NCBI RefSeq assembly: GCF_001194135.2
Contig: NC_068982.1
Location: 114,708,026 to 114,772,025 of the forward strand
Reading direction: 5' to 3'
From: Octopus bimaculoides
Lineage: Eukaryota
DNA: 64,000 bases
Shown in pieces: positions 3,060 to 63,611 of the stretch. The position numbers were made by a program, and so were the translations under genes. Within the stretch, counting starts at the first letter, position 1. Every line of letters begins with the position of its first letter. The notes below the pieces were generated by a model. That model had not been told where the DNA came from. It saw only the letters and a program-made list of their open reading frames with translations, and did not search any database.

Positions 3060-3226
3060 TACAATTAAACCTTGGGAGAGGCATTATGCCGGTAATAAAC
3101 ACACGCACTGGTTCAGTCCTTTATTAATTTATATAGTTTTTAGTTAAAACTATATAAATTAATAAAGGACTGAACCAGTGCGTGTGTTTATTACCGGCAT
3201 AATCCCTCTCCCAAGGTTTAATTGTA
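3060..3226. repeat. near-perfect palindrome (81-bp arms, 5-nt loop)
   Basis: 3060-3140 is the reverse complement of 3146-3226 with one mismatch. Loop TAGTT at 3141-3145. Confidence 0.95.
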
Positions 3227-5682
3227 TAATTTTCCATATTTGAGTTCAAAACAGTGAGTATATTCTCTTCAAGTAGTAAAATATGATTTGTAGCATCATA
3301 ATCTGGTTAAACAGGGGAATACTTTAAGATTCCTCTAAAAAAAAAAATGGTTGGCTCTTTAAATTATCCATTTCTGGTTGCTTTCCTGATGATTCTATTT
3401 GATGAATAAAGAATCAACACCAATTTATGCGTGCAGGTTTGACTGTGTACTTAAGAGGTTTGCGTCAAAATTACTTGAATTTTTGATTGGATCTCACCGC
3501 GCAGGAATCTGGACATCTTTAGTCCCAACTCTGACATATTAGGAGCAATGCTATTCATCACTGTATTGTTACAATAATAGAATATACACTGCTAAAAGTA
3601 GTGTGATGATGAAAGAAACATACCCAAATGCAAAAGGCATTCCAAAATGCTTGAGCAAGTGAAACAATTTGCTTATTGAACCTATTCTAAACATTGCCCG
3701 AGCAAGCTGCTGCTTTTGTTGTTGTTGTTGCTGCTGCTCCTGCTGCTGCTGCTGATGATGATGATGATGGTGATGGTGATGATGATGATGATGATGATGA
3801 TGCTTCTCTTACTGCTGCAGTAAATTATCCCTAGATCAGCCTTGATTCAACAAATCTGTGATCAAAAACGTTGAGACCATGATCCTCCCTCTCGTAAGGC
3901 AAAATGTTTGTAGGACTATATATATAGTCATCGATACACACATATGTAGGATGTAGTTTCAATGAGACTTGGCTGCTATTTCTGATTGTTCGATAACCAC
4001 GTATAAGCTCGTAACATTTCTCTTCCGCTTAGCTTCTTTTTTTTCTCAACAACTGCAAGGCTTTCCATTTATGTACGCTAAACTTGATTGACCAAGTTTT
4101 CTCTTAGATAGCAAGAGAAAACCTTTTGAGAGTCTTGTCTTCAACAAATCAATCTGAGGATGGTGAAGTGTTCGTGGTGGGAGACAAGCAGAGATCCGAA
4201 ACACACACATATAGATATATACATATACGACGGTCTTCTTTCAGCTTTCATCTCCTAAATGCATAAGGCTATAGTAGAAAACAGAGCAAGAACATGGAAA
4301 AAATTCGTGTTGCTATTGTCGCGATTAAATGGAGCCGCTTAAAACGGTCGTACTGCAGTACTATTTGCCATGTTGTTGCTTATTTTGATTATGCGTGTGT
4401 ATTATATAAGTATATCAGATATATGCATACATGTATTATATATCAGCTTTTATCTTCTATTTGTTTCAACGATATGACTTCGGCCGTGCTGTAGCACCGA
4501 ATAAAATGGTTTAGGCAAAAAATCAACCCCCAATAATCATACATATTATTAACTGCAAACCGAACTAATGCATTTAACAGGTTATTTATTGTTCAGCACT
4601 CGTTGTTGTGTATGGCCACAGCTTGTCTTTTTCATTTGTATATTTTCATCTGTTATCGTGTTTCTGTCTTCATTTGTGACCTATAAGCTTAAATTTTTCG
4701 TGGAGTTTTTTCTTAAATGGCTTAAACCCATCATTTACACATAATTTTGTTTGTATATTCTTTTTTGCTCTTGATCATTCATCACAGTTTTCTTCCCTTA
4801 TTTTAGTTTTCATAATGCATGCTTTTGAGAGTTAAGTTGTACCACAAAGATCTTTCTTTAAACAAGTATTCCGTATCTACTGCGTTGATGTCAAAGATTT
4901 TCATTAATATTTGGAGAAAATCATTAAAACACTTCTGCCCCCCAACTGAACGATTTTCTTGAAATGACTCACTGTAAAAGATCGTTTAGTGTTTGCTATA
5001 ACTGGAGTTCTAATCAATCGAATTTGATTTGGGGGGGGGGGGCTGTTAGAAAAAAAATTTTAAGTTATCAATGACGAACAATGAATTATCTGGATACAAA
5101 CTCCATTTGCTCTTCTTTTTTTTTTTGTTAATAAAGAGAGAGGAAGATATTTCTGGAGGGGCTAGTATTTGTCATTTTGGGAGAACCATTGCAGACTGAT
5201 ATGTGCTCGTAACATACTGAACCTTTCTAAAACGAATCAAAAAACAATGAACCTTAAACAGTTGTTTCTAGGTTAGACAGTTGAGGTTCTGGATAACGTG
5301 TCGTTAACATCTGTCTTCTCTCTGTTGAATAGGAAACTACTGATTCAAAGCTAAATTTTCCTTTGTGATTCATTGTTGTATACTTTCAGACGGTTTTAGA
5401 TGGATTTTTTAATCAAATGCTTTTCAAAAGTCACGAAATATTTTGTCTACTTGCTCTTCGTGATTTGGTATCTGCTTCAAGATAATTATGAATTATATTT
5501 GAATTATTTCACATTATCACTGCAACAGAGTTTTCGTTCGTCGGAAATGTTACAAGTTTTTTTCGCTATTTTTTTTAATTTTTTTTACATGATATTTTTT
5601 ACTAACGCTTTTATATACGGATTATATCACCTGAATTACTATTCCAGTTTATGTTGGATGGAGTAGGATTAATATTAGCTTC

Positions 5683-47235: not shown

Positions 47236-48166
47236 TATTGTTGAGCAGCAGGTCAGCTTGATTGATCAGACCTATGATCAAAGGTTTCCATCCAGGACCA
47301 TCAGGTATGTTTTTTTAAGACAGTGTATCTAGAAATGCATTATCCAATGTGTCCTTCCTTGGAGAGACAATAGGAAGGTGTATGATTTGATGCCAAAACA
47401 GACAATTGGAGCCTGGTGCTACTCACCAGCTGGCCAGCTCCTGTCAAACCGTCCAACCCATGCCAGCATGGAAAATAGATTTTAAATGATAATGATGATA
47501 ATGATGTATAATGACCTGTAGAGATATATTTGTACTGAGAAATAATAAATCTTTAATTTTACAAATTCATAGTTATGCAACTTGTATTAAATTACTGTTT
47601 TGAATCTTAAGGATTAAACTAGGTGAGGGTGTTAATGAGTTTCTATAGACTTCACATAACAGGTCCTTTAAATTTGAATGTTGACAGGATTTTGCTTTCA
47701 ATTAAGAGGCTCTCACATAGAAACTTGACATAGAAACTTGACATAGAAACTCCATTGTTGGTTCAAAGTAAATATTAATCAGACTATTAACTTCATTTTT
47801 TCAGGTGGTACCACAATATTTTTGACATGCACACTTCTTTCAATTCATATTTCATCCACACTCTTTCACATAATTCAAAGTCTCTTATTGAAAGTAAATG
47901 TCAAAGCATTAAATATAATATTAACCAAAAACCCCAATGAAAATACTCAAGCATAAATTTAAAACCTACTATGACTGCAATGTGATGATTCCTCAACACA
48001 AAATATAAAGTGTGGCACCTGAAGATGATCAGAAAATATGCCAACCAACAGGTAAACAAATACTGAAAAAATTGTTATGAATAGTCTGATTATGAATCTT
48101 TAAAATGTAGAAATATAAATTAAATTTAAAAAATGACATTAAGAAACACAGAAATGTGTAACAAAT

Positions 48167-48172
48167 TTTATT
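48167..48172 (-). promoter_or_regulatory. candidate SELENOF polyadenylation signal
   Basis: Minus-strand AATAAA followed by a T/GT-rich tract (TTTCTGTGTTTCTT), about 400 nt after the stop and downstream of the SECIS. Confidence 0.55.
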
Positions 48173-48349
48173 AATAATCCATGTGACCAGAAATAAATAT
48201 AAGAAAATTACATATCATGAAATACTATTAAAAAAAGAAAATTCATGATAAAAATAAATGGAATATTATATTCTTATTTAGTACCCACAATGATGGATTT
48301 AAGAGAGAAAAGATATAAAAATAGGCAGCTCTGAAATTCAAGTAATTGC

Positions 48350-48416
48350 TTTCTCATTTTGTATCCAACCTTACAACCTTAAATTAAGTTTTTAGTAAGA
48401 TTTTCATAGAGAGAAA
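48350..48416 (-). promoter_or_regulatory. SECIS element (type II-like) in the SELENOF 3' UTR
   Basis: Minus strand TTTCTC-TCT-ATGA-A-AATCTTAC-T-AAAAA-CTTA-ATT-TAAG-GTT-GTAAGGTT-GGAT-ACAAAAT-GAGAAA. Helix I is TTTCTC/GAGAAA, the core is ATGAA/GGAT, helix II is AATCTTAC/GTAAGGTT, with apical A run and mini-stem. Confidence 0.75.
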
Positions 48417-48576
48417 TCATTTACTAAAATGCTAATATTTTACGACCAGACCAGCCAACTGTAACATTAAGTATATGTGGTAGATGGTAAACTTTGAGAT
48501 TACCAAACTAGTCAGCAATATTAGCTACTTTGAATAGCAGAGCTGGTGAATAGATGCTTTGTGTTTTTTTGCATTT

Positions 48577-48755
48577 TTACTTCATTAAACGTTCATGAAA
48601 GAAGGCCTCCACAGAATCAGTGTTCCACTTCTCAATTCCTAGGGTTTCGACTATTTCTCTGTTCTCATTTAACAAATGGATAGTCGGATCAGCACCACGT
48701 GTGTACTTAATTTTAAGACCTGGAAATTGTTGTGTACGAGCGCTTTTCACAAAAG
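48577..48755 (-). CDS. SELENOF: selenoprotein F (Sep15), last coding exon
   Basis: Acceptor TTTGTCATTTCAG, phase 1. Reads (A)FVKSARTQQFPGLKIKYTRGADPTIHLLNENREIVETLGIEKWNTDSVEAFFHERLMK*, matching vertebrate AFVRSDKPKLFRGLQIKYVRGSDPVLKLLDD...LSILKWNTDSVEEFLSEKL. Confidence 0.95.
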
Positions 48756-49557
48756 CTGAAATGACAAATGAAATGATTCAGTAATTTTGTTAAGAAAATT
48801 AAACCAGACTTCTGTAATTCATTAGTTCTTAAAGTAATTATAAGTTAATTCACACAGTTATTCATCCTCATAAAATATTGTAACATTGCTTTTTAAGAGA
48901 CTGAGTTACAAAATTATATAATAAATATATATATATATATATATATATANNNNNNNNNNNNNNNNNNNNNNNNNNNNNNNNNNNNNNNNNNNNNNNNNNN
49001 NNNNNNNNNNNNNNNNNNNNNNNNNNNNNNNNNNNNNNNNNNNNNNNNNNNNNNNNNNNNNNNNNNNNNNNNNNNNNNNNNNNNNNNNNNNNNNNNNNNN
49101 NNNNNNNNNNNNNNNNNNNNNNNNNNNNNNNNNNNNNNNNNNNNNNNNNNNNNNNNNNNNNNNNNNNNNNNNNNNNNNNNNNNNNNNNNNNNNNNNNNNN
49201 NNNNNNNNNNNNNATATATATATATATATACCTAATATGAAATCTACATAAAGATACCATTACTGTTCTTATAAATAAGTTTAATTAATCTATAAGCTTA
49301 AATATTTAACATCATCTTATAGAAGATTTTAACATAAACAACTTTATAGATTATTTAGATGATTTCTTATTTAAAGAGTCTGTAATTAAATATCTTCAAC
49401 ATGGATGGAGTAATACATTCCATTAATGGAAGTTTTTGGTGATAAAATCAAATAAACAGACTAAAATGTTAAGTGTAAACAGCCAGAGTAGCTAATGCAA
49501 CAACACTCTATAAAAAATTCCTCCAGAACAACAAGGAAATTCTTGAGTTTGACTTAC

Positions 49558-49621
49558 CTTGAACCTGTGGATACCTTCCTAATTTTCATCCGCATACAAT
49601 TAGTTCAGCATAGGGATACAT
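49558..49621 (-). CDS. SELENOF: selenoprotein F (Sep15), Sec-containing exon (64 nt)
   Basis: Acceptor TTTTGTTATATTTCAAAG, donor AAG|GTAAGT. Reads MYPYAELIVCG-TGA-KLGRYPQVQ, the CxU motif of Sep15 (human LYAGAILEVCGUKLGRFPQVQ). Splices in frame to 48755. Confidence 0.95.
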
Positions 49622-49876
49622 CTTTGAAATATAACAAAAACATAACAAAACTTTTAAGTAAAGATAATATCAAAAATATTTGATACAGGTTAAATTTATT
49701 TAATCAACAGCTATATACAGATTAAGTTCCAACAAAAATGGAGGCTTAAACATATCTAAGTGACATTTATGTTTTTTGATATCCATAATAAAAACCAAGC
49801 AAATATCAATGGATAACTTCTCTGCAACTAACAGAGTACTACATAAAAGTTGCTGTAACAGACTGAATAACATATT

Positions 49877-49931
<55 letters not shown>

Positions 49932-50906
49932 ATGCATCTCCATTACTACCATAGGCAGTAATGGAGATAAACACAGGTAAGCCTGATATAAATATATTTA
50001 CATGTAGCACAAAATAAATACAGAATAAGGTAAGGTAATATGTAATTTCATAACTCAACAGTTGTTTCAGGAAACCTAGATTTACATGATAATCATGATA
50101 ATCATAAATTGCAGATGAAATGCACAAAAAGTCATGGGTATGTAACCTGTAACTAGTCACATGAAGAAATTACAATAAGTCCAGTTCTCCTCATCAAGAG
50201 AAGATGTAACCCATGCCAGATGGAAAAGTGAACACAAATTGCTGCTGCTGCTGGTGGCCATCAATTTTGCATTGTATGCATGTATGTATAGACAGGCAGT
50301 CACATTCCTAGATATCACAGAATGAGTGGTATATTCTATAATCATCAATATCAAAGTTTTATATCCACTTTACCATCAGGCTCAAGTTGGGCAGTTTTAC
50401 TCAAGTAGTGTTTTAGAGTCAGATACCACTCTTGATGCAACCCTTTTCATCACTTCTTACAGTATATAGGAATGTGATATGTCTATTCTAAAACAAGCAT
50501 AACACACTGTAACTGAAAATTCTATAAAATTGAATTAATTGTTGATTATCTCAAAAAACTTATTGATTTGAGAAGCTACAGACAATGCTAGAGAACTCTA
50601 GCTCTGTATCATATATGTTTAATGCTGTCAGATACCAATACATGTCTGATGTTGAATACTTGTACACTTTGATGCTAAAAACTACTTTTAATGTTAGATA
50701 TTACATAACTATACATACATTTGATATTAAACATCTGAACACTTTGATGTTATTTAATAACTACCATTATCGTCATTGTTTCACATCTGTTTTCCATGCT
50801 GGCATGAGTTGGACTAACAATATTTGATGCTAAATACCTGTACACTGTATTTGAAGTTAGAAAAACCTTTACCCTTTCACGTTAAATACTAATATATATA
50901 CATATA

Positions 50907-52097: not shown

Positions 52098-53239
52098 TAT
52101 ATATAATGATGATGATGATATTTGATGTTAAATACTTGTACACTTTTAAGTTATTAAATGGTATTTTTTTAATGTCAAATGTGAAATCATTATGTAACTA
52201 CAAATATTGATGTTATTAGATAAGTACACATGTTTGATGTTATGATGATCAGATCCCAAATGGAGTCTTTATCGATGGGAGAAGTGAATATCTAACAGAA
52301 GCAGTTGATAGTCAACTAAAATTTCAAAGATTGACTACATCCACCAGCAAAACCGCAATACAAAACAGTATATAAAATATAAGTAAAAAATATTTGTTCA
52401 TATACTGTATAGTCTCTAAGTTGAAATCCCATCAGACTTAGTTTTGTGTTTCACTCTACTAGAGATGATATGTAGCAGTAGCATAAAGAGGTTGATTCAA
52501 ATAACAATAAATACTTCATTCAACAATTCATCTTAACTTAAGGAAGAAATTAATATGTGTAAATTTTACTTTATCTTATATATTAATTACATGCAAAAGC
52601 AAAACATTTAATCATTATATGAAATCTTAGGGAACAGTGTACTATTTTGGGAATAATAGTTTGGCCACATTTGTCATGTTGGATTTTACAACTGATATTA
52701 TCATCATCACAATTTTATATGTGCTTTTTTATGCTGGCATGAATTTGGGGTTTTCCTGCGGCACAGTTTTACAGCTAGATGCACTTCTTGTTGCCCACCC
52801 TTACAATATGCATGGACACTGTGTACCTATTCTAAAACCACAGTAAGCTATTACTAAACAGAGTAATAAAAACTCAAATACAATAAGTCCTTTACAAAAG
52901 AATACATTAGTTTGCATCTATTAGTTCAGAAGATAATTCTAGGTCTAAACTAGGATGACCTACATTTCATTGATACAGATACAAACAAAAATGTGAACAG
53001 TTAGAATATCTTCTGCAGTGTGTCAGTCAGTACATCATCACATTAAACACCAAAATAGTTTCTGAATTTCCAGACTACAAGTTGTGATATCTCAAGCATC
53101 CTGGTATCTATTTTAACTAATGTTAGGTTAAACTTGGTAGCTTGTAAAACTTCCAGAATGGTTCATGTAAGAAAAAGTGAGTAAATATACAGTTAGAGTC
53201 TTTTCTTCAATTATTTAGGAATATTTCTCAAATTGAGAA

Positions 53240-53371
53240 TTTCCAAAAATTGCACCTAACCTGTACCCTCCGGGTACAGTGGTGCGCTCAATTATTAATT
53301 GCAGGTGTCAGCAGTCTTGCCCTCAGTAAACCCTCCTTGAGCAAGCTCCCAACCCCCTGACGAGGACGGTT
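53240..53371 (-). ncRNA. RNU4ATAC: U4atac minor-spliceosomal snRNA
   Basis: 5' AACCGTCCTCGTCAGGGGG (human AACCATCCTTTTCTTGGGG). K-turn stem-loop CTTGCTC-AAG-GA-GG-GTTTA-CT-GA-GGGCAAG. TGAGGGCAAGACTGCTGACACCTG (human TGAGGGCAGTACTGCTAACGCCTG). 3' stem-loop GCACC/CTGTACCC-GGA-GGGTACAG/GGTGC. Sm site AATTTTTGG (human GGTGCAATTTTTGGAAA). About 132 nt; the exact 3' end is uncertain. Confidence 0.9.
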
Positions 53372-54682
53372 AACTATATTTTGTCGTATTCTAATATATA
53401 CACTGAGCAAAATGTACATTTGTAGGTATTGACTAACGGAGTAGTCATCGCCATTAATGTACAGCGAAATATTGCGCTTAACAAATTATATCAACTTAAT
53501 TTAAAGAACATAATTAATCATTTTCGTAGATGTAACGTTTTGAATTAAACTGAAAAATAATTATTTAAGACTTTTTTCTGAAAGTTTACTTAAAAATATT
53601 ATTATTACTTCCCTTGACACGACACTTCCGCTTAATATGGGTTTCCTCCCTTAGCTTAGAATTTCTAAGAAATATTTATTCCACGTATTAATTTTCCACG
53701 TATTAATTTTCTCTCTCTCTCTCCGTCTCTCTCCACACACACATTCCTTCACACTTATTCTATCCCGCCCTTCTCGTTAACTGCCTGCTAAAATCATATA
53801 AATATTTATCGAGATGTTATATGAATGTACGTCACTCGGAAATTTGGCTGCGGCATTACGTGTTGTATATTCATACCCACCACCGCGATTCATTACATAT
53901 CTTAGTCAAATCACTTAATTCTACATGCCTTACTAATAAACTTAGTTGTTGTTGTTTAGTCCCATGTCAGCTCTGATCAAAAGGCATTAGAGCCGTGACA
54001 ACCACATTATGTTTTTTCACCTCCGTCGGACAAAATGTATTGCAATATTTGTTCTAGTTCAATACGTTCCGAGATCAACTTCATCCTTATGGAGGCCGGG
54101 GCAATAAAATAGAGTACCAGTTAAGTACTTGAGCTGAAGGTATTGATTAACCCGTCGTTTCAAAATTGATGGCCCGGTGCCTAAAATAGAAACATTGAAG
54201 ACGGTAGGGGGTGATCTAAGGGTTATCTGTCTGCTTTTTCTAGCAAATAGATAGAGCAGTTTTGAAATGACTTTTTTTATTTGATTTTTTATTTTTTTAT
54301 TTACTTATTTTGATTTTCCTGATTTTCATACAAATATAAATCATGGTTCTGGAAAAAAATTTAGTTAATGTTTACTTTAACTACCGGTCACCAAAACAAA
54401 CAAAAAAAACGAGTGTAATAGGTGTAAAAAAAAATGTGTATTAAACGAATGTGAAAACAAAAATTTGCGCCAACGAACGGGGGGGGGCGGAGAAAGGATT
54501 TTCGGAAAATTCGCAAGATCCGATTTTTCCCCTCATAACTTTTAGGAAAATGGATATCTTCTAGTGAAATTTTAAATAAATACCTTTCAAACGGCATAGA
54601 TTACGATTATAAAGAACGGGATGCTACAAATCAATATGACATATAATTTAAATTTTAATATATGTTCACGACATAATTTTCG

Positions 54683-54700
<18 letters not shown>
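53372..54700. promoter_or_regulatory. CpG-retaining region upstream of U4atac (candidate promoter)
   Basis: CpGs are frequent here but sparse in the flanks (by eye). CACTTCCG (ETS-like) at 53623-30, CCCGCCC at 53764-70, TACGTCA at 53828-34, and ATGGCG about 80 nt upstream of the snRNA start. Confidence 0.45.
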
Positions 54701-54723
<23 letters not shown>

Positions 54724-54827
54724 GAAGAAGAATGGAACGAACGAAACTGTTTATAATAAATATCATGCATGCTCTCATTGATATGCTAATTTTAGTACAT
54801 GCTTTTTGTGTGTTTGCACATATATAT

Positions 54828-56877: not shown

Positions 56878-57298
56878 AACATGGAAAAGGACAGGACAAG
56901 TTATTACACCTGTAAAAGTATAGGACAAGCTATTACTTCTAGTAAAGTAAAGATTAAGAAACTTTTTACTTAAAATATCGCAGCAAAGAATGCCAGTTCT
57001 AATTTATCACTCTTTACAGCTCTCATCATTAAAATTTATTGTACAAAACTGTTCAGCTAATTTCTAAGTTTGTCTAATTAGTCACTTTTTTCTGTATTTA
57101 AGGTAGTAAATTAACCAAATTCTACTTGAATAAGTATAGTGTTATTTGTAAACTATAATAAAATAAATTTTAATATTCAAATTTTAATTTTAGCTGCAAT
57201 ATTTTAAGTAAAAGTTTCTTATTCTTTACTTTACTTGAAGTAATAGCTTGTCCTATACTTTTACAGGTGTAATAACTTGACCTGTACTTTTCCAGGTT
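56878..57298. mobile_element. TA-flanked MITE with about 107-bp inverted arms
   Basis: AACATGGAAAAGGACAGGACAAGTTATTACACCTGTAAAAGTATAGGACAAGCTATTACTTC... (56878-56984) is the reverse complement of 57193-57298. TA at 56876-77 and 57299-300. Confidence 0.75.
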
Positions 57299-59800
57299 TA
57301 CATGGCTTGCACAGCTCTCACTAACCATTCATCTATCCCTAGTTTCCTCATTGACCACCAGATAAGGGATTGGGGGACCCTGTCAAAGGCTTTTTCCATA
57401 TCAACGAAAGCCAGATACAGAGGTTTATCCTTGGCTAGGTATTTCTCCTGCAGTTGTCTTACCAGAAATATAGCATCAGTGGTGCTTTTCCCTGGCACGA
57501 ACCCAAACTGCATCTCATCTAAACTGATTCGTTCCCTAATTAGTTGAGCTATGACCCTCTCCGTGACTTTCATTACCTGATCCAACAACTTGATACCTCT
57601 GTAATTATTTGTATCTAAAGCGTCACCTTTACCTTTGTAGCAGTTGACAATGGTGCTGCTACACCAGTCATTGGGTATGACTCCTTCATGTATCACCTGG
57701 TTAACTATACGGGTGACTAGGCTATAGCCAATAGACAGATATTTTGAGCATCTCTGCAGTGATTCCTGATGGGCCGGAGGCTTTCTCTGTCTTCATACTC
57801 TTGATTGCTTTATCTACCAAGGTACTGTCAATTCGGATAGCTGGTCCCTCTGTTGGGTCGACATTCGGCAGACTCTTTCTCCCATTCATTCTCTTTATTG
57901 AGCAACCTTTCATAGTAATGTCTCCAAACCTCTCTCTCTCTCTTTGCAGCCTTGTTTAGTGCAAGTGAACCATCATCCATGCAGACACATTTCTCTCCAA
58001 CATCACGATTCCCTCTCACACACTGTCTTGCAACACAAAATACTCAAGTCTTTGGTCCTCACAGCACAGAACATTGGCAAATTTTTTCTTATCTGCTTCC
58101 CCTCTAGCTGAATAAACCTGTCTCCTAGCTTCCCTTCTGGCAGTCTGATACAATTCCCTGCTACCACCGTTCTTCCAATCCTTCCAAGCCTGTTTCTTTT
58201 GTCAAATAGCCCTATCAACAACAATGTTCCACCACCACATTATTTTGGGTCGAGAGGGGACTTTGCATCATCCACAGAGCTGCTCAGTGGCCCTCAGCAG
58301 GTTGTCCTGTAGAAACATCTAATTTTCTTCCACATCGTGTGAAGTTATATCCCCTTCTATTTCATCAAAGGCTTCGAGTAATACATCTCTAAATCTCTGT
58401 CCATTCGCAGGATCTTTAAGCTTCCAGACCCTTCTCCTCCATGCTGGTCCTCTTCTGGGCATCCATTTAGCCCTGATCCTGACATTGCTAACTACCAGTC
58501 TATGTTGTGGGATACATTTTTCGCCTGGGAAGGTTTTGGCATTTATAAGTAGCCGTTTTCCCCTTTTTCTGGTGAGGATGTAGTCAATTTGGCTAAGTGT
58601 GTCTGCCAGAACAGTAGGTGACTAGGTGACTGGCAGGTTTCCTGAAGTTAGTATTGCAAACCATAAGATCATTTGCATCGCAGAACTCCAGCAGCCTGGT
58701 AGCCTCCATGTACACCATGGAAGCCCCCTGTATGTTATCCAACATGTCCAATGAAGTCACCAGCCACAAAGAGGAGGTCCCTGTCATTCGTCAACGAGGT
58801 AGTCTGCAAGAGGGTGTCATAAAATCGGTCCTTCTGTCCATCAGGTAGCCCCGGCTGAGGGGAACAGGCCGAGATAATGTTTGCTAACCCATGATGAAGC
58901 ACTAATCTAATCTTAAGTACTCTGTCACATACTCTGACTACCTCGATTACCTTATCAACTCATTTCTCAGCATGAAGTATACGCACGTCCCTGACTCCGT
59001 CAGTGTTCTTTGCCCAGAAAATCTTGTACCTGTGTTTTTTGCCTGTGAGGAACCTAGCAGAACCTCCTCTCCACCTTACTTCTAGGATGCAGCACAAATC
59101 GACACATCTCCGTTCAAGCATCTCAAAAATCTCACCAGACCTACTTTTCAGTGTGCCGACGTTGAGAGTACCAACCCTGAGGGTGTAGGAGGTATGGGCC
59201 TATGAGACCCTGGGACAGGGGACAGCAGCATCATGTACCTGAATAGAAAGCTCACATTTGGCAGAATTCATAAACAAACAATAGCCTTCATTTCAACCTG
59301 CATACACTACACCATCATATCTATGCACTATATGATCACTACCTTACATAGGAGATAAACCCTAAGTAGGGGTGGGGATGGCATAAAGGCTTTAGAAGTG
59401 TGCATGGGAGACAACCAAAGAATGACACAGGATAGGAACTTCCAGTACAGGTGGAGGGGGTCAGAGGGTCGGTGGGCGGGCGTACTATGAACTAACAAAT
59501 TTAGACGGGAGCATCTTCTGGATACGTATTCTTTCGGCGGAGGTATTAAAAATCGAGTAGGGGAATCCAAGTGCATGCACTAGTTTATATAGGATAGGGG
59601 TGGGGGAAGTCTTGGCGAAGCAAGTGGTAATCGAAAGAGAGACAGATAGACAGACAGAGTGAGGCCGAGAGAGAGAGAGACAGACAGAGTGAGGCCGAGA
59701 GACAGTGAGGCAAAGAGAGAGAGGGGGTACCAGAGTTAGGGTGGTCAGAACACGAGGGAGAAAAATATTCTTTTGGGATTTGGGTAGCATAATTTAAAGA
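57299..59800 (-). mobile_element. RTE-clade LINE, 5' part (5' region, APE endonuclease, start of RT), defective
   Basis: TLRVGTLNVGTL (EN start, ~59170); ...CNTNFRKPASHLVTY; NYRGIKLLDQVMKVTERV...FGFVPGKSTTDAIF...AFVDMEKAFDRVP. Contains frameshifts. The 5' boundary is approximate. Confidence 0.85.
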
Positions 59801-60689: not shown

Positions 60690-63300
60690 CCAATCTGAGC
60701 TGGCAATATTTCTACAGCTGGATGTTCTTCCTAACGCCAATCACTAAGAGTGTAGTGGGTGCTTTTTACGTGTCAGTGGCACAGAAGCCAGTCAAGGGGT
60801 ACTGGCATTGGCCACATTCGGATGGTGCTTTTTGCATACCACTGGCACAGGGGCCAATCAGGCGGTCTTGACATCAATCCTGTTCAGATAATGGTATTTA
60901 TGTGCCACCGGCACGGGAGCCAGTCAGGGGATACTGGCCACAGCTATGATATTGGTTTTATTTGACTCAACAGGTCTTCTCAAGCGTATCATATCACCCG
61001 ACACATCGTGTACACTTAACTGGGCCAGATAAACATGGCTGCAATCTCACTTTAGTTGCCGAGTCTTCTCAAGCTCAGCATATCTCCAAAGTTCTCGGTC
61101 TCCGGTCATTTCCTCTGTGAGGCCCAATGTTCAAAGGTCATGCTTCAACACCTCATCCCATGTCTTCCTGGGTCTACCTCTTCGATAGGTTCCTTCCACA
61201 GTTAGGGAGTGGCACTTCCTCACACAGCTGTCCTCATCCGTGCGTAACACACGACCATACCAGCGCAGTTGTCTCTTGCACACCACATTTGATGCTTCTT
61301 GTGCCCAACTTTTCTCTCAGGGCACTTACACTCTGTCGTGTATGCACACTGACATTGCACATCCAGCAGAGCATATTAGCTTCATTTCTTTCAAGCCCAT
61401 GCATGTCTTCAGCAGTCATGGCCCATTTTTTACTGACATGTAGCATGACTGTTTGCATGCAGGCATCATACAGTCTACCTTTCATCCTGAGCAAGAGGCC
61501 CTTAGTTGCCAGCAGACATAAAAGCTCCCTGAACTTTGCCCAGACTATTCTTATTCTAGCCGCTACACTCTCAGAGCAACCACCCCCACTACAAACTTGG
61601 TCGCCTAGGTCGTGGAAGCTATTAATTACTTCCAGTTTCTCCACCAAGCATATAATGGAATCTGTTTTCTGTACAACTTCAGTGTTTATTGCCCCTGTGC
61701 ATCTGTTACACACAAAAACTATCTTCCCATTTAACCTTCCTTTGATATTGCTGCACCTTTTATTTGTCCATAGCTTACACCGAGTACACCGTATGGAGTT
61801 TCTACCCACGCCTTTTCTACAGATCGAACAGAGCCATCTACCTGAAGGGGTTTGTGATTTGACAGCCTTCCTACTTACTAAGACTTTGGTTTTTGCTAGG
61901 TTAACCCTAAGGCCCTTCACTTCTAGACCTTGCTTCCACACCCTAAACTTCGTCTCTAGTTCTGGCAATGACTCAGCTATTAGAGTAAGGTCATCAGTAT
62001 AGAGAAGCTCCCAGGGGCAGCCTGTCTTGAATTCCTGTTATTGCCTAGAAGACTATGATGAATAAGAGTGGGGATGACTATACTCATTACCAACCCTCAC
62101 CTTACTGACAACATCCCTCTATCTCTAGTTTCTGCATTGACCACCAGATAAGGGATCAGGGGACTCTGTCAAAGGCTTTCTCCAAGTCAACAAAAGCCAA
62201 ATACAGAGGTTTATCTTTTGCTAATTGTCTTACCAGAAATACAGCATCAGTGGTGCTTCTGCTTTGCACAAAACTAAACTGCATCTCATCTAGGCTAAGT
62301 CTCTCCCTAATTAGTTGGGCTATGACTCTGTAACTGTCATCACTTGATCCAATAATTTGATACCCCTGTAGTTATTGCTATCTAAAGCATCGCGTTTACC
62401 CTCATAGCAGTTGATTATGGTGCTGCTACACCAGTCATTGGGTATCACTCCTTCATGAACTACCTGATTTACAACATGACCATAACCCACACCACCCAAT
62501 ATTTTAAGCATCTCAGCGGCGACTTCTGATGAGCCAGGTGCTTTCTCTGTCTTCATATCCTTAATTGCTTTATCTACCAGGGTACTGTCGATTTGGATAG
62601 CTGGTCCCTCAACTGGGTCAACATTTGGCAGACTCTCCTCCTCCCATTCATTCTCTATATTCAGCAGTCTTTCATATAATGGCATCTCCAAGCCTCTTTC
62701 TTTGCAGAATCATTAAACGCAAGGGCACCATCATCCATGCAGACACACTTCTCTCCTATAACATCACAGTTTTCTCTCAAACACTGTCTTGCAATCCGAA
62801 ATACTTCAGTTCTTTAGTCATCACATCGCTAGACATTGGCAAACTTCTTTTCTGCTTCTCCCTTAGCTATGTATACCTGTCGCCCAGCCTCCCTTCTGGC
62901 TACCTGGTACAGTTCCCTGCTACCCCCACTCTTCCAGGCTTTCCAGGTGCCTAGTCCCCTCTTCATTTCTGGTACCAATTTCATGGCCCCCATGTACACC
63001 ATGGGAGATATCAGGTTGCTGTCCAACATGCCCATTAAAATCTCCAGCTACAAAGATAAGATCATTGTCACTCGTCTTTGAGGTAGCCTGCAGAAGAATA
63101 TCATAAAAGTGATCCTTCTGTTCATTTGGTAGGCCCGCTTGTTGGGTGTAGGCAGAGATAATTGTAGTAATATCATTCTGCAAGACCAGCCTGAGTTTAA
63201 GTACTCTATTGCACACCCTCACTACCTCTATGACCTTATCCACCCATTTCTCTGCAAGAAGTATGCCCACACCCCCTATTCCATCACTATTACCTTCCCT
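60690..63300 (-). mobile_element. RTE-clade LINE, internally deleted (EN part, RT pieces, PHD-like finger, C-terminus, 3' UTR)
   Basis: GVGILLAEKWVDKV...AGDFNGHVG; NYRGIKLLDQV; LLYTDDLTL; KGLRVNLAKTKV...CSIC...CTRC...CNRC; ARIRIVWAKFRELL. The 3' UTR equals family C. Confidence 0.85.
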
Positions 63301-63611
63301 GTACATATATATATATATATATATATATTTATTACTTATATATATGCATCTTAAAACAATTCATTGAGAGCTGTACCAAGTCAGCTATCATAAAATCTCC
63401 ATATCAACCAATAAGAGGGAAATTTTAGGTAAAACACTATAAAATAAATTACTCAATGAACACTGAGAAATTCCTGAGGTAGATCCAGCGACAAATGTGT
63501 AAATACTGTGGATGACATCAGGTAGTCATAGGCAGTGAACGTGTTTCATCAGCTAACTACTAGGAACATACTCAATACTTAAATAATTATTTATCTATTT
63601 TACATATATAT

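What the first reader, a model, noticed from the sequence alone, without database searches (positions are those of the whole stretch)
53240..53371. Unannotated-looking U4atac snRNA gene (minor spliceosome)
Seen: all expected modules in order on the minus strand: 5' stem II arm (53371-53353), k-turn 5' stem-loop (53345-53316), stem I arm TGCTGACACCT (53313-53303), 3' stem-loop (53285-53252) and Sm site (53251-53243). Established: U4atac chaperones U6atac in U12-type intron splicing, is usually low-copy, binds 15.5K/Snu13 at the k-turn, and is often missed in invertebrate annotations. Intact pairing in every helix argues for a functional gene rather than a pseudogene.
Basis: partly seen in the sequence, partly recalled or inferred. 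Interest (0 to 1): 0.85.

Follow-up and report, generated by a model that had tools for sequence, protein, structure and literature searches.

The report
Genuine octopus U4atac snRNA gene
This is a real, expressed, evolutionarily constrained gene for U4atac, the small RNA that chaperones U6atac in the minor (U12-type) spliceosome, sitting in an intron of an octopus selenoprotein gene; it is an ordinary member of a well-known family that standard Rfam scans find.

Summary
Rfam's U4atac model (RF00618) matches window 53370-53239 (minus strand) over its full length at 83.3 bits (gathering score 53, E 1.2e-12). The gene is transcribed. Contigs from nine RNA runs of the same species and from RNA runs labelled as three related species cover it. 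Nearly all stop within about 10 nt of the predicted +1, and their 3' ends are ragged. DNA contigs show one full-length copy, plus one diverged partial second locus that the four RNA runs tested at 80% likeness do not show. In four runs labelled as three related octopus species, substitutions avoid the stem II arm, the k-turn stem-loop and the Sm site. The two that hit pairing arms are consistent with G.U wobbles. An upstream block (-38 to -76) and a TATATATT core (-30 to -23) are conserved while the sequence between them and around the TATA core has diverged. The lineage is Octopus, and published surveys have already run this model over cephalopod genomes, so novelty is low. Lineage-specific details are a G at k-turn position L3, a conserved stem-loop after the Sm site and a TATA-containing promoter. 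In one run a read-through RNA is spliced into the selenocysteine exon of the host SELENOF-like gene.

The parts
53239..53371 (-). U4atac snRNA, the core covered by the Rfam model. +1 is at 53371 or 53370.
   Evidence: RF00618 at 83.3 bits, full length. RNA contig ends on the 5' side are 53361, 53362, 53362, 53370, 53375 and 53379 in organism A, 53371 in organism B and 53372 in organism C.
53353..53371 (-). 5' arm that pairs with U6atac (stem II): AACCGUCCUCGUCAGGGGG
   Evidence: Sequence. No substitution in organisms C (X35) and D, the two runs whose listing covers it.
53313..53347 (-). 5' stem-loop with a kink-turn. The C-stem is CUUGCUC/GGGCAAG. The 5+2 internal loop is AAGGA (53338-53334) opposite GA (53324-53323). 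The NC-stem is GG/CU and the loop is GUUUA. The L3 bulge nucleotide is G where the consensus has U.
   Evidence: Rfam alignment, MFE fold, and invariant in all four related-species runs.
53303..53313 (-). Stem I arm UGCUGACACCU, which pairs with U6atac
   Evidence: Sequence. G53309 is A in every relative, which matches the Rfam consensus CUAAC. Either base would pair with a U in U6atac (the U6atac partner is from memory).
53286..53302 (-). Single-stranded linker, the most variable part of the RNA
   Evidence: Four of the eight variable sites lie here: 53287, 53289, 53291 and 53292.
53252..53285 (-). 3' stem-loop: GCACC/GGUGC plus CUGUACCC/GGGUACAG
   Evidence: C53282>U opposite G53255 keeps a wobble pair. 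The other two changes are in the internal and apical loops.
53243..53251 (-). Sm site AAUUUUUGG
   Evidence: Fits the consensus PuAU3-4NUGPu quoted in PMC9881141. No substitution listed in any relative.
53218..53244 (-). Stem-loop after and overlapping the Sm site: GGAA/UUCC enclosing UUCUCA-AUU-UGAGAA. It is either a 3'-terminal hairpin of a mature RNA of about 154 nt or a precursor structure.
   Evidence: Folds. In organisms B and C the only change is in the loop (53232). RNA contig X17 ends at 53217. It is not part of the Rfam model. The mature 3' end was not determined.
53199..53210 (-). Candidate 3' box UUGAAGAAAAGA (inference only)
   Evidence: It lies 8-19 nt beyond the post-Sm stem. 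The rule of 9-19 nt past the mature end is from PMC9881141. It is a loose resemblance, not an exact match to the vertebrate consensus.
53393..53400 (-). TATATATT core at -30 to -23
   Evidence: Unchanged in organism D, although six of the sixteen flanking positions changed (53391, 53392, 53401, 53403, 53404, 53408).
53409..53447 (-). Conserved upstream block (-38 to -76), the candidate proximal sequence element. It contains ACTCCGTTAGTCAATACC.
   Evidence: Organism D shows 1 difference in 39 nt here against 14 in the 37 nt between it and +1, Fisher p = 9.6e-5.
52964..53238 (-). Read-through region, ending at a GU donor (AAAU|GUAGGU, cut between 52964 and 52963)
   Evidence: RNA contigs end at 53217, 53200, 53166, 53155, 53140, 53101 and 52964. 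The X18 contig joins 52964 to 49621, skipping 3342 nt with GT..AG on the minus strand.
49558..49621 (-). Selenocysteine-encoding exon of the host SELENOF/Sep15-like gene (…VCG-U-KLGRYPQVQ)
   Evidence: The 49557-48756 intron is spliced in four RNA runs. Pfam Sep15_SelM scores 96.2 bits.
48155..48755 (-). Terminal exon of the host gene. The stop codon ends at 48577 and the SECIS element is at 48415-48351.
   Evidence: Contigs, translation, and SECIS_1 at 32.6 bits with E 1.4e-4 in this stretch.

Best explanation
Window 53371 to about 53239 (minus strand), and possibly on to about 53218, is the functional single-copy U4atac snRNA gene of an octopus. Most likely RNA polymerase II transcribes it from its own promoter, which has a conserved PSE-like block at -38 to -76 and a TATA-like core at -30 to -23. 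It lies inside an intron of a SELENOF-like gene on the same strand. By analogy with the characterised human and fly RNAs, the following would happen. The transcript is cut by Integrator near a downstream 3' box. It receives an Sm ring on AAUUUUUGG. Its kink-turn 5' stem-loop binds Snu13/15.5K and then Prp31. Its 5' arm and its UGCUGAC arm pair with U6atac (stems II and I), keeping U6atac inactive within the U4atac/U6atac.U5 tri-snRNP until Brr2 unwinds the duplex during activation on U12-type introns. What is shown here: the family match, the structural modules, transcription with a sharp 5' boundary, single copy number, purifying selection on the RNA and on an upstream block, and transcription running past T-runs. 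What is inferred: the polymerase, cap and 3' processing, protein binding, U6atac pairing, and the role in splicing.
For: RF00618 matches at 83.3 bits against a gathering score of 53, full length, E 1.2e-12. All modules are present. RNA contigs from nine runs of organism A and from RNA runs of organisms B, C and D cover the gene. Their 5'-side ends cluster at 53361-53379, except X14 (to 53490), the organism D contig (to 53465) and a short X31 fragment. DNA contigs of four runs show one exact copy at flank depth plus one second locus that matches only 37 nt. That second locus is absent from four RNA runs at 80% likeness. It also carries single-base indels between species in the region where the window copy is invariant. 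For organism D, the gene has 6 differences in 124 visible nt against 16 in 77 upstream, p = 7.8e-4. The PSE-like block has 1 in 39 against 14 in 37, p = 9.6e-5. Within the gene, constrained-class sites vary at 2 of 71 against 6 of 36 for the rest, p = 0.017. All 24 intramolecular pairs stay canonical in five distinct orthologue sequences. Transcripts pass T5/T4 runs at 53249, 53176, 53149, 53055 and 52991, which argues against Pol III. Pol II synthesis, 3'-extended precursors and their capture in poly(A)+ libraries are documented for human U4atac (PMC9881141). Cephalopods and other molluscs are known to keep the minor spliceosome.
Against: No small-RNA or total-RNA data, Northern blot or cap/Sm immunoprecipitation was available. 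The mature size and 3' end are therefore unknown, and expression rests on assembled contigs from libraries of unrecorded type. The organism's U6atac could not be retrieved, so the defining intermolecular pairing is untested. Variation among the species is low and gives only one-sided (wobble) changes with no compensatory double change, so the structure is supported by constraint and not by covariation. The kink-turn L3 nucleotide is G where the family consensus is a strongly conserved U, and I found no data on whether Snu13 tolerates this. A TATA box next to a PSE marks Pol III genes in vertebrates and insects.
Confidence: 0.93

Rival explanations
1. The window copy is a non-functional or redundant copy, and the working U4atac is encoded elsewhere, for example at the second U4atac-like locus.
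For: A second single-copy locus shares 37 nt (53332-53296, 4 differences). It has a U4atac-like 5' flank, …UUCUUGGGGCUGGAAGCUU…, and is present in organisms A, C and E.
Against: The second locus matches at 80% or better over only 37 nt. Its visible 5' strand (CUUUACA) cannot pair with GGGCAAG unless the four unseen differences compensate. It shows indels between species in its stem II region. It is not seen in four RNA runs that all contain the window copy. The window copy is invariant in stem II and the k-turn across species.
Confidence: 0.04
2. The RNA signal comes from the host SELENOF-like gene, as intron reads or as a cassette or alternative exon spanning 53362-52964. On this view the U4atac-like sequence is a relic that is not made as a small RNA.
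For: The locus lies in a host intron on the same strand. One contig (X14) runs from 53127 to 53490 across the start site at low depth. The X18 contig is spliced to a host exon. An AG at 53375-53374 could in principle act as an acceptor.
Against: Eight of nine organism A RNA contigs, and those of two other species, stop within about 10 nt of the predicted +1 and do not continue upstream or splice to an upstream exon. Neutral intron sequence would not show the module-specific constraint, the conserved upstream block or an 83-bit covariance-model score.
Confidence: 0.02
3. It is a Pol III-transcribed U4atac-like gene, because it has a PSE-like block plus a TATA box.
For: A conserved TATATATT core lies at -30 to -23 downstream of a conserved block. 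In vertebrates the TATA box is the dominant Pol III determinant, and in insects it marks U6 and U6atac genes (PMC1761439).
Against: The T5 run inside the Sm site would terminate Pol III inside the RNA, yet contigs run through it and through four further T4-T5 runs. Sm-class snRNAs are Pol II products (PMC9881141). From my own knowledge, not checked here, sea-urchin and plant Pol II snRNA genes also use TATA elements.
Confidence: 0.03

Closest known systems
Human U4atac snRNA (RNU4ATAC; Rfam RF00618)
   Same: The order of modules is the same: stem II arm, k-turn 5' stem-loop with a 5+2 internal loop and tandem G.A pairs, stem I arm, linker, 3' stem-loop, and an AAUUUUUGG Sm site. It is low copy. 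It lies inside an intron of a protein-coding gene; the human gene is in CLASP1 intron 2 (PMC12703291). 3'-extended forms appear in poly(A)+ data (PMC9881141).
   Different: The L3 bulge is G, not U. G replaces A in the stem I arm, and this is specific to the window's species. A conserved stem-loop follows the Sm site, whereas human U4atac (130 nt, since its 19-nt 108_126 deletion leaves 111 nt) ends a few nt after the Sm site. The promoter carries a TATA-like core. The gene is on the same strand as its host, whereas the human gene is antisense to CLASP1.
U4 snRNA of the major spliceosome (Rfam clan CL00007)
   Same: It has the same architecture and role: it chaperones U6 through stems I and II, has a k-turn 5' stem-loop bound by Snu13/15.5K, and has an Sm site. 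U4 also has a stem-loop 3' of its Sm site (my own knowledge), like the extra stem seen here.
   Different: Within the clan the U4atac model gives the best score, so no competing U4 hit is kept. The pairing arms read like the U4atac consensus (ACCnUCCU…, CUAACACC) and not like U4.
Chimeric sn-mRNAs formed when Integrator cleavage fails (C. elegans; PMC6390993, as cited in PMC9881141)
   Same: A transcript that starts at an snRNA gene escapes 3' cleavage, reads into the downstream gene and is spliced to its exons. Here, U4atac reads through to 52964 and is joined to the SELENOF exon at 49621.
   Different: Here it is seen in an apparently unperturbed sample, in one run of four examined, and its abundance is unknown. 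The downstream exons belong to the host gene in whose intron the snRNA gene sits.

Membership tests
U4atac snRNA (Rfam RF00618) | Covariance-model score at or above the curated gathering score, over the full model | tested here: met
   83.3 bits against 53, model positions 1-132 of 132, E 1.2e-12.
U4atac snRNA (Rfam RF00618) | 5' stem-loop with a kink-turn: a 5+2 asymmetric internal loop with tandem sheared G.A pairs, flanked by a canonical stem and a short NC-stem | tested here: met
   CUUGCUC-AAGGA-GG-GUUUA-CU-GA-GGGCAAG. The G.A/A.G positions are present. L3 is G where the consensus has U. The element is invariant in related species. Protein binding was not tested.
U4atac snRNA (Rfam RF00618) | Sm-protein binding site (PuAU3-4NUGPu) downstream of the 3' stem-loop | tested here: met
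   AAUUUUUGG at 53251-53243. The consensus is quoted from PMC9881141.
U4atac snRNA (Rfam RF00618) | Complementarity of the 5' arm and the central arm to the same organism's U6atac (stems II and I) | not testable with these tools
   No U6atac is in the window, and no eukaryotic genome collection is searchable. The only indirect support is that the A/G polymorphism at 53309 would pair with U either way, assuming the conserved U6atac GUUAGCA, which I recall from memory.
U4atac snRNA (Rfam RF00618) | Expressed as a discrete, stable small RNA | tested here: inconclusive
   The gene is transcribed in nine runs with a sharp 5' boundary. These are assembled contigs, and they include 3'-extended forms. 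Raw poly(A) RNA-seq reads were too sparse. The mature size was not determined.
U4atac snRNA (Rfam RF00618) | Purifying selection on pairing arms, k-turn and Sm site relative to linker and flanks | tested here: met
   2 of 71 against 6 of 36 variable sites (p = 0.017), and gene against upstream in organism D (p = 7.8e-4). There are no double compensatory changes because divergence is too low.
SNAPc-dependent Pol II snRNA gene | Proximal sequence element at about -55 and a 3' box 9-19 nt beyond the mature end, with no Pol III termination | tested here: inconclusive
   A conserved block lies at -38 to -76 (p = 9.6e-5), and transcripts read through T-runs. No other snRNA promoter from this genome was available to define its PSE, because the U6-like hit at 3503-3604 is a pseudogene. 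The 3' box is only a loose resemblance. A TATA-like core is present.
Minor-spliceosome function | Required for splicing of U12-type introns | not testable with these tools
   This needs knock-down or genetic tests. The literature shows that molluscs, including Octopus, keep minor introns and that the giant squid has all four minor snRNAs.

The most novel reading that the evidence does not exclude
The U4atac gene may double as a tissue-specific alternative first exon and promoter of its host selenoprotein gene. Transcripts that start at the snRNA promoter and escape Integrator cleavage are spliced (52964 to 49621) onto the selenocysteine-encoding exon of SELENOF. That would couple the efficiency of minor-spliceosome snRNA 3' processing to the output of a truncated or non-coding SELENOF isoform in normal tissue. 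A weaker version is that cephalopod Sm-class snRNA genes routinely use PSE-plus-TATA promoters, so that polymerase choice is encoded differently from vertebrates and insects.
Probability: 0.1. Interest if true: 0.45.

Novelty: already known. Interest (0 to 1): 0.15.

Why it matters
The gene matters mainly for annotation. It fixes the position of the octopus U4atac gene and identifies which of two U4atac-like loci is the live one. It also gives candidate promoter and 3'-end elements for a lophotrochozoan Sm-class snRNA gene, a group for which I found no promoter description in the papers retrieved. It does not change what is known about the minor spliceosome. The side observations could interest snRNA-biogenesis specialists if confirmed with proper small-RNA and long-read data. 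These are the G at k-turn L3, the extra post-Sm stem, the TATA-containing promoter, the sense-intronic position in SELENOF and the spliced read-through chimera.

Tried and rejected
1. Raw poly(A) RNA-seq reads (X40-X42) gave only 4-11 reads over 1.2 kb and said nothing about transcript ends.
2. I hoped to use the sub-threshold U6 hit at 3503-3604 as a second snRNA promoter to define the PSE. It is a degenerate pseudogene: ACAGUGA replaces ACAGAGA, there is an internal deletion, and there is no U-tail.
3. The second U4atac-like locus is not in the window, and its full sequence could not be retrieved. Only 30 nt on each side are known, from loose ends.
4. Supplementary tables of the two pan-eukaryotic minor-snRNA surveys are not held or do not mention Octopus, so I could not show that this exact locus was reported.
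5. A look-up of the human PSE consensus in the SNAPc structure paper found nothing. The resemblance of ACTCCGTTAGTCAATA to the vertebrate PSE rests on memory and is not used as evidence.
6. The literature retrieved on the k-turn L3 uridine (U31 of U4) did not say whether G is tolerated.
7. The Fisher test on organisms E and F is withdrawn. The table was truncated, and differences near the ends of aligned pieces are never listed. Only the complete listing is used.
8. The upstream host exon was searched for in the window and not found.
9. I considered that this might be U4 and not U4atac, and rejected it on the clan-resolved Rfam result.

Full report
OBSERVATION. On the minus strand, the window reads 5'-AACCGUCCUCGUCAGGGGGUUGGGAGCUUGCUCAAGGAGGGUUUACUGAGGGCAAGACUGCUGACACCUGCAAUUAAUAAUUGAGCGCACCACUGUACCCGGAGGGUACAGGUUAGGUGCAAUUUUUGGAAAU-3' from 53371 to 53239. 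A scan of the whole window against Rfam 15 gave exactly one match at gathering level. It was U4atac (RF00618) at 53370-53239, minus strand, 83.3 bits against a gathering score of 53, E 1.2e-12, covering model positions 1-132 of 132. The strand folds better than all 200 dinucleotide shuffles, with z = -2.88. In the model's register, three pairs are non-canonical. With a one-base shift at the base of the 5' stem-loop, all 24 intramolecular pairs are canonical.

EXPRESSION. Public runs of the same species ('organism A') hold the sequence. Contigs from nine RNA runs cover the gene. On the RNA's 5' side they end at 53370 (X26), 53375 (X25), 53379 (X17), 53362 (X18, X19) and 53361 (X27). X31 gave only a short internal fragment (53140-53301). 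Only the low-depth X14 contig continues upstream, to 53490. RNA contigs from related species end at 53371 (organism B) and 53372 (organism C), while the organism D contig runs on upstream to 53465. The 3' ends are ragged: 53217, 53200, 53166, 53155, 53140, 53101 and 52964. That is what one expects if these libraries caught 3'-extended or adenylated snRNA species, as documented for human U4atac in poly(A)+ data (PMC9881141). Raw reads from three 2026 poly(A) RNA-seq runs were too few to add anything. The mature 3' end is therefore not determined.

COPY NUMBER. DNA contigs of four runs were laid at 80% likeness. They show one exact full-length copy at the same depth as its flanks, plus one second contig of similar depth that matches only 53296-53332 with four differences. 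In RNA sense, its flanks are UUCUUGGGGCUGGAAGCUUUACAUAACGAU on the 5' side and UUAUUAUCAUUUAUGAAGAGGGCAAUGUCC on the 3' side. The flanks show it is U4atac-derived. However, the visible 5' strand of its stem-loop no longer matches the 3' strand. Its stem II region also differs by single-base indels between organism A and organisms C and E, whereas the window copy is invariant there. It is absent from four RNA runs that all contain the window copy, and it is not in the window.

CONSERVATION. One search gives a complete list of substitutions for four runs labelled as organisms B, C (two runs that differ from each other) and D. Differences within about 17 nt of the ends of aligned pieces are not listed. 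Eight sites vary inside the gene:
- Four are in the linker: 53287, 53289, 53291 and 53292.
- One is in the internal loop of the 3' stem-loop (53259).
- One is in its apical loop (53271).
- C53282>U lies opposite G53255, which keeps a wobble pair.
- G53309 is A in all relatives. This restores the family consensus CUAAC and would pair with a U of U6atac in either state.

No change is listed in 53310-53371 (stem II arm and k-turn stem-loop) or in the Sm site. Sites in constrained classes vary at 2 of 71, against 6 of 36 for the rest (p = 0.017). All 24 pairs are canonical in all five distinct sequences. There is no double compensatory change, because divergence is too low. For the most distant species (D), the gene has 6 differences in 124 visible positions against 16 in 77 upstream (p = 7.8e-4). 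I withdraw the statistic on organisms E and F printed, because the table was truncated.

PROMOTER, 3' END AND POLYMERASE. In organism D, 14 of the 37 positions between +1 and -37 have changed. Only 1 of the 39 positions from 53409 to 53447 (-38 to -76) has changed (p = 9.6e-5). This block is the candidate PSE. The TATATATT core at 53400-53393 is untouched although six of its sixteen flanking positions changed. In vertebrates and insects, a TATA box beside a PSE marks Pol III genes (PMC1761439). Here, however, the RNA contains a T5 run in its Sm site, and contigs run through that and through four more T4-T5 runs. Pol II is therefore the better reading, as for human U4atac. After the Sm site, the sequence GGAA-A-UUCUCA-AUU-UGAGAA-AUA-UUCC (53244-53218) forms a stem-loop. 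In organisms B and C its only change is in the loop (53232). Its reconstruction in organism D is not verified. It may be a 3'-terminal hairpin of a mature RNA of about 154 nt, and contig X17 ends at 53217. Alternatively, it may be a precursor structure overlapping the Sm site, of the kind proposed for major pre-snRNAs (PMC10584915). UUGAAGAAAAGA at 53210-53199 is a possible 3' box, by position only.

CONTEXT. The deep X18 contig (429 nt) runs from 53362 to 52964 and then continues with 30 nt that match 49621-49592 exactly. The junction skips 3342 nt with GT..AG ends on the minus strand. The exon 49621-49558 is spliced to a terminal exon at 48755 to about 48155 in all four RNA runs examined. 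Together they encode MYPYAELIVCG-U-KLGRYPQVQAFVKS…HERLMK*, which matches Pfam Sep15_SelM at 96.2 bits. A SECIS element lies at 48415-48351 in the 3' UTR (32.6 bits, E 1.4e-4). In the other three runs, and in a second contig of X18 itself, this exon is joined to an upstream exon that is not in the window. No assembly gap lies between 49626 and 53238. U4atac therefore sits in an intron of a SELENOF-like gene on the same strand, and in one run a read-through U4atac transcript is spliced onto the selenocysteine exon. The contig's depth of 115 is a mean over the whole contig and may be inflated by mature snRNA reads, so the abundance of the chimera is unknown. Human RNU4ATAC is also intronic, in CLASP1 intron 2, but antisense to its host (PMC12703291).

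LINEAGE AND NOVELTY. A retroelement ORF at 61234-61968 has named relatives only from Octopus bimaculoides. The window is also a gap-rich, AT-rich draft with 2015 DNA and RNA runs. The source is therefore an octopus, probably that species or a congener; this is an inference. All four minor snRNAs were found with Rfam models in the giant squid genome (PMC6962438). Pan-eukaryotic surveys ran RF00618 over thousands of genomes, used Octopus sinensis in their comparisons, and noted relative minor-intron enrichment in molluscs (PMC10639083; PMC11347168). The gene is thus an expected orthologue that routine annotation finds. I could not check whether this exact locus already carries an annotation.

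VERDICT. This is a genuine, expressed, single-copy, constrained U4atac gene (confidence 0.93).

Noticed in passing
window 48155-48755 and 49558-49621, minus strand: These are the two last exons of a SELENOF/Sep15-like selenoprotein gene. It has an in-frame UGA in the CGU redox motif, and Pfam Sep15_SelM scores 96.2 bits. A SECIS element at 48415-48351 scores just below Rfam's gathering score (32.6 against 35). The gene is highly expressed, with depth up to about 1800 in X17. Its upstream exons are not in the window.
   Followed up: yes
window 52964 joined to 49621, minus strand (run X18): A read-through U4atac transcript is spliced (GU…AG, 3342-nt intron) onto the selenocysteine exon of the host gene, giving an sn-mRNA-like chimera. 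It was seen in one of the four runs examined, and its abundance is unknown.
   Followed up: partly
elsewhere in the genome (not in the window); matches window 53296-53332: A second single-copy U4atac-derived locus is present in organism A and in organisms C and E. It is diverged, with indels between species, and is not seen in RNA. It is a probable pseudogene.
   Followed up: partly
window 3503-3604, minus strand: A U6-like sequence scores 38.1 bits against a gathering score of 44. ACAGUGA replaces ACAGAGA, there is a 5-nt deletion, and there is no terminal U-run. It is a U6 pseudogene.
   Followed up: yes
window 3086-3200, both strands: A near-perfect palindrome scores 92.3 bits on both strands against the plant MIR2593 model (gathering score 96.2). 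It is most likely an inverted-repeat or MITE-like hairpin and not a homologue of that miRNA.
   Followed up: no
window 57298-57696 and 61234-63306, minus strand: These are fragments of a non-LTR retroelement (reverse transcriptase plus PHD finger). Their closest named relatives are Octopus bimaculoides proteins at 63-78% identity.
   Followed up: partly
window 48886-49083, 49876-50073, 50668-50865, 54626-54726: Simple or dispersed repeats reach enormous depth in RNA contigs, up to about 170,000. They produce many spurious 'joints'. The numerous mir-297, mir-3149 and mir-466 sub-threshold Rfam hits are (TA/CA)n repeats of the same kind.
   Followed up: no
window 53338-53334: The k-turn bulge reads AAG. 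L3 is G where U is strongly conserved in the U4atac consensus. The G is unchanged in all four related-species runs.
   Followed up: partly
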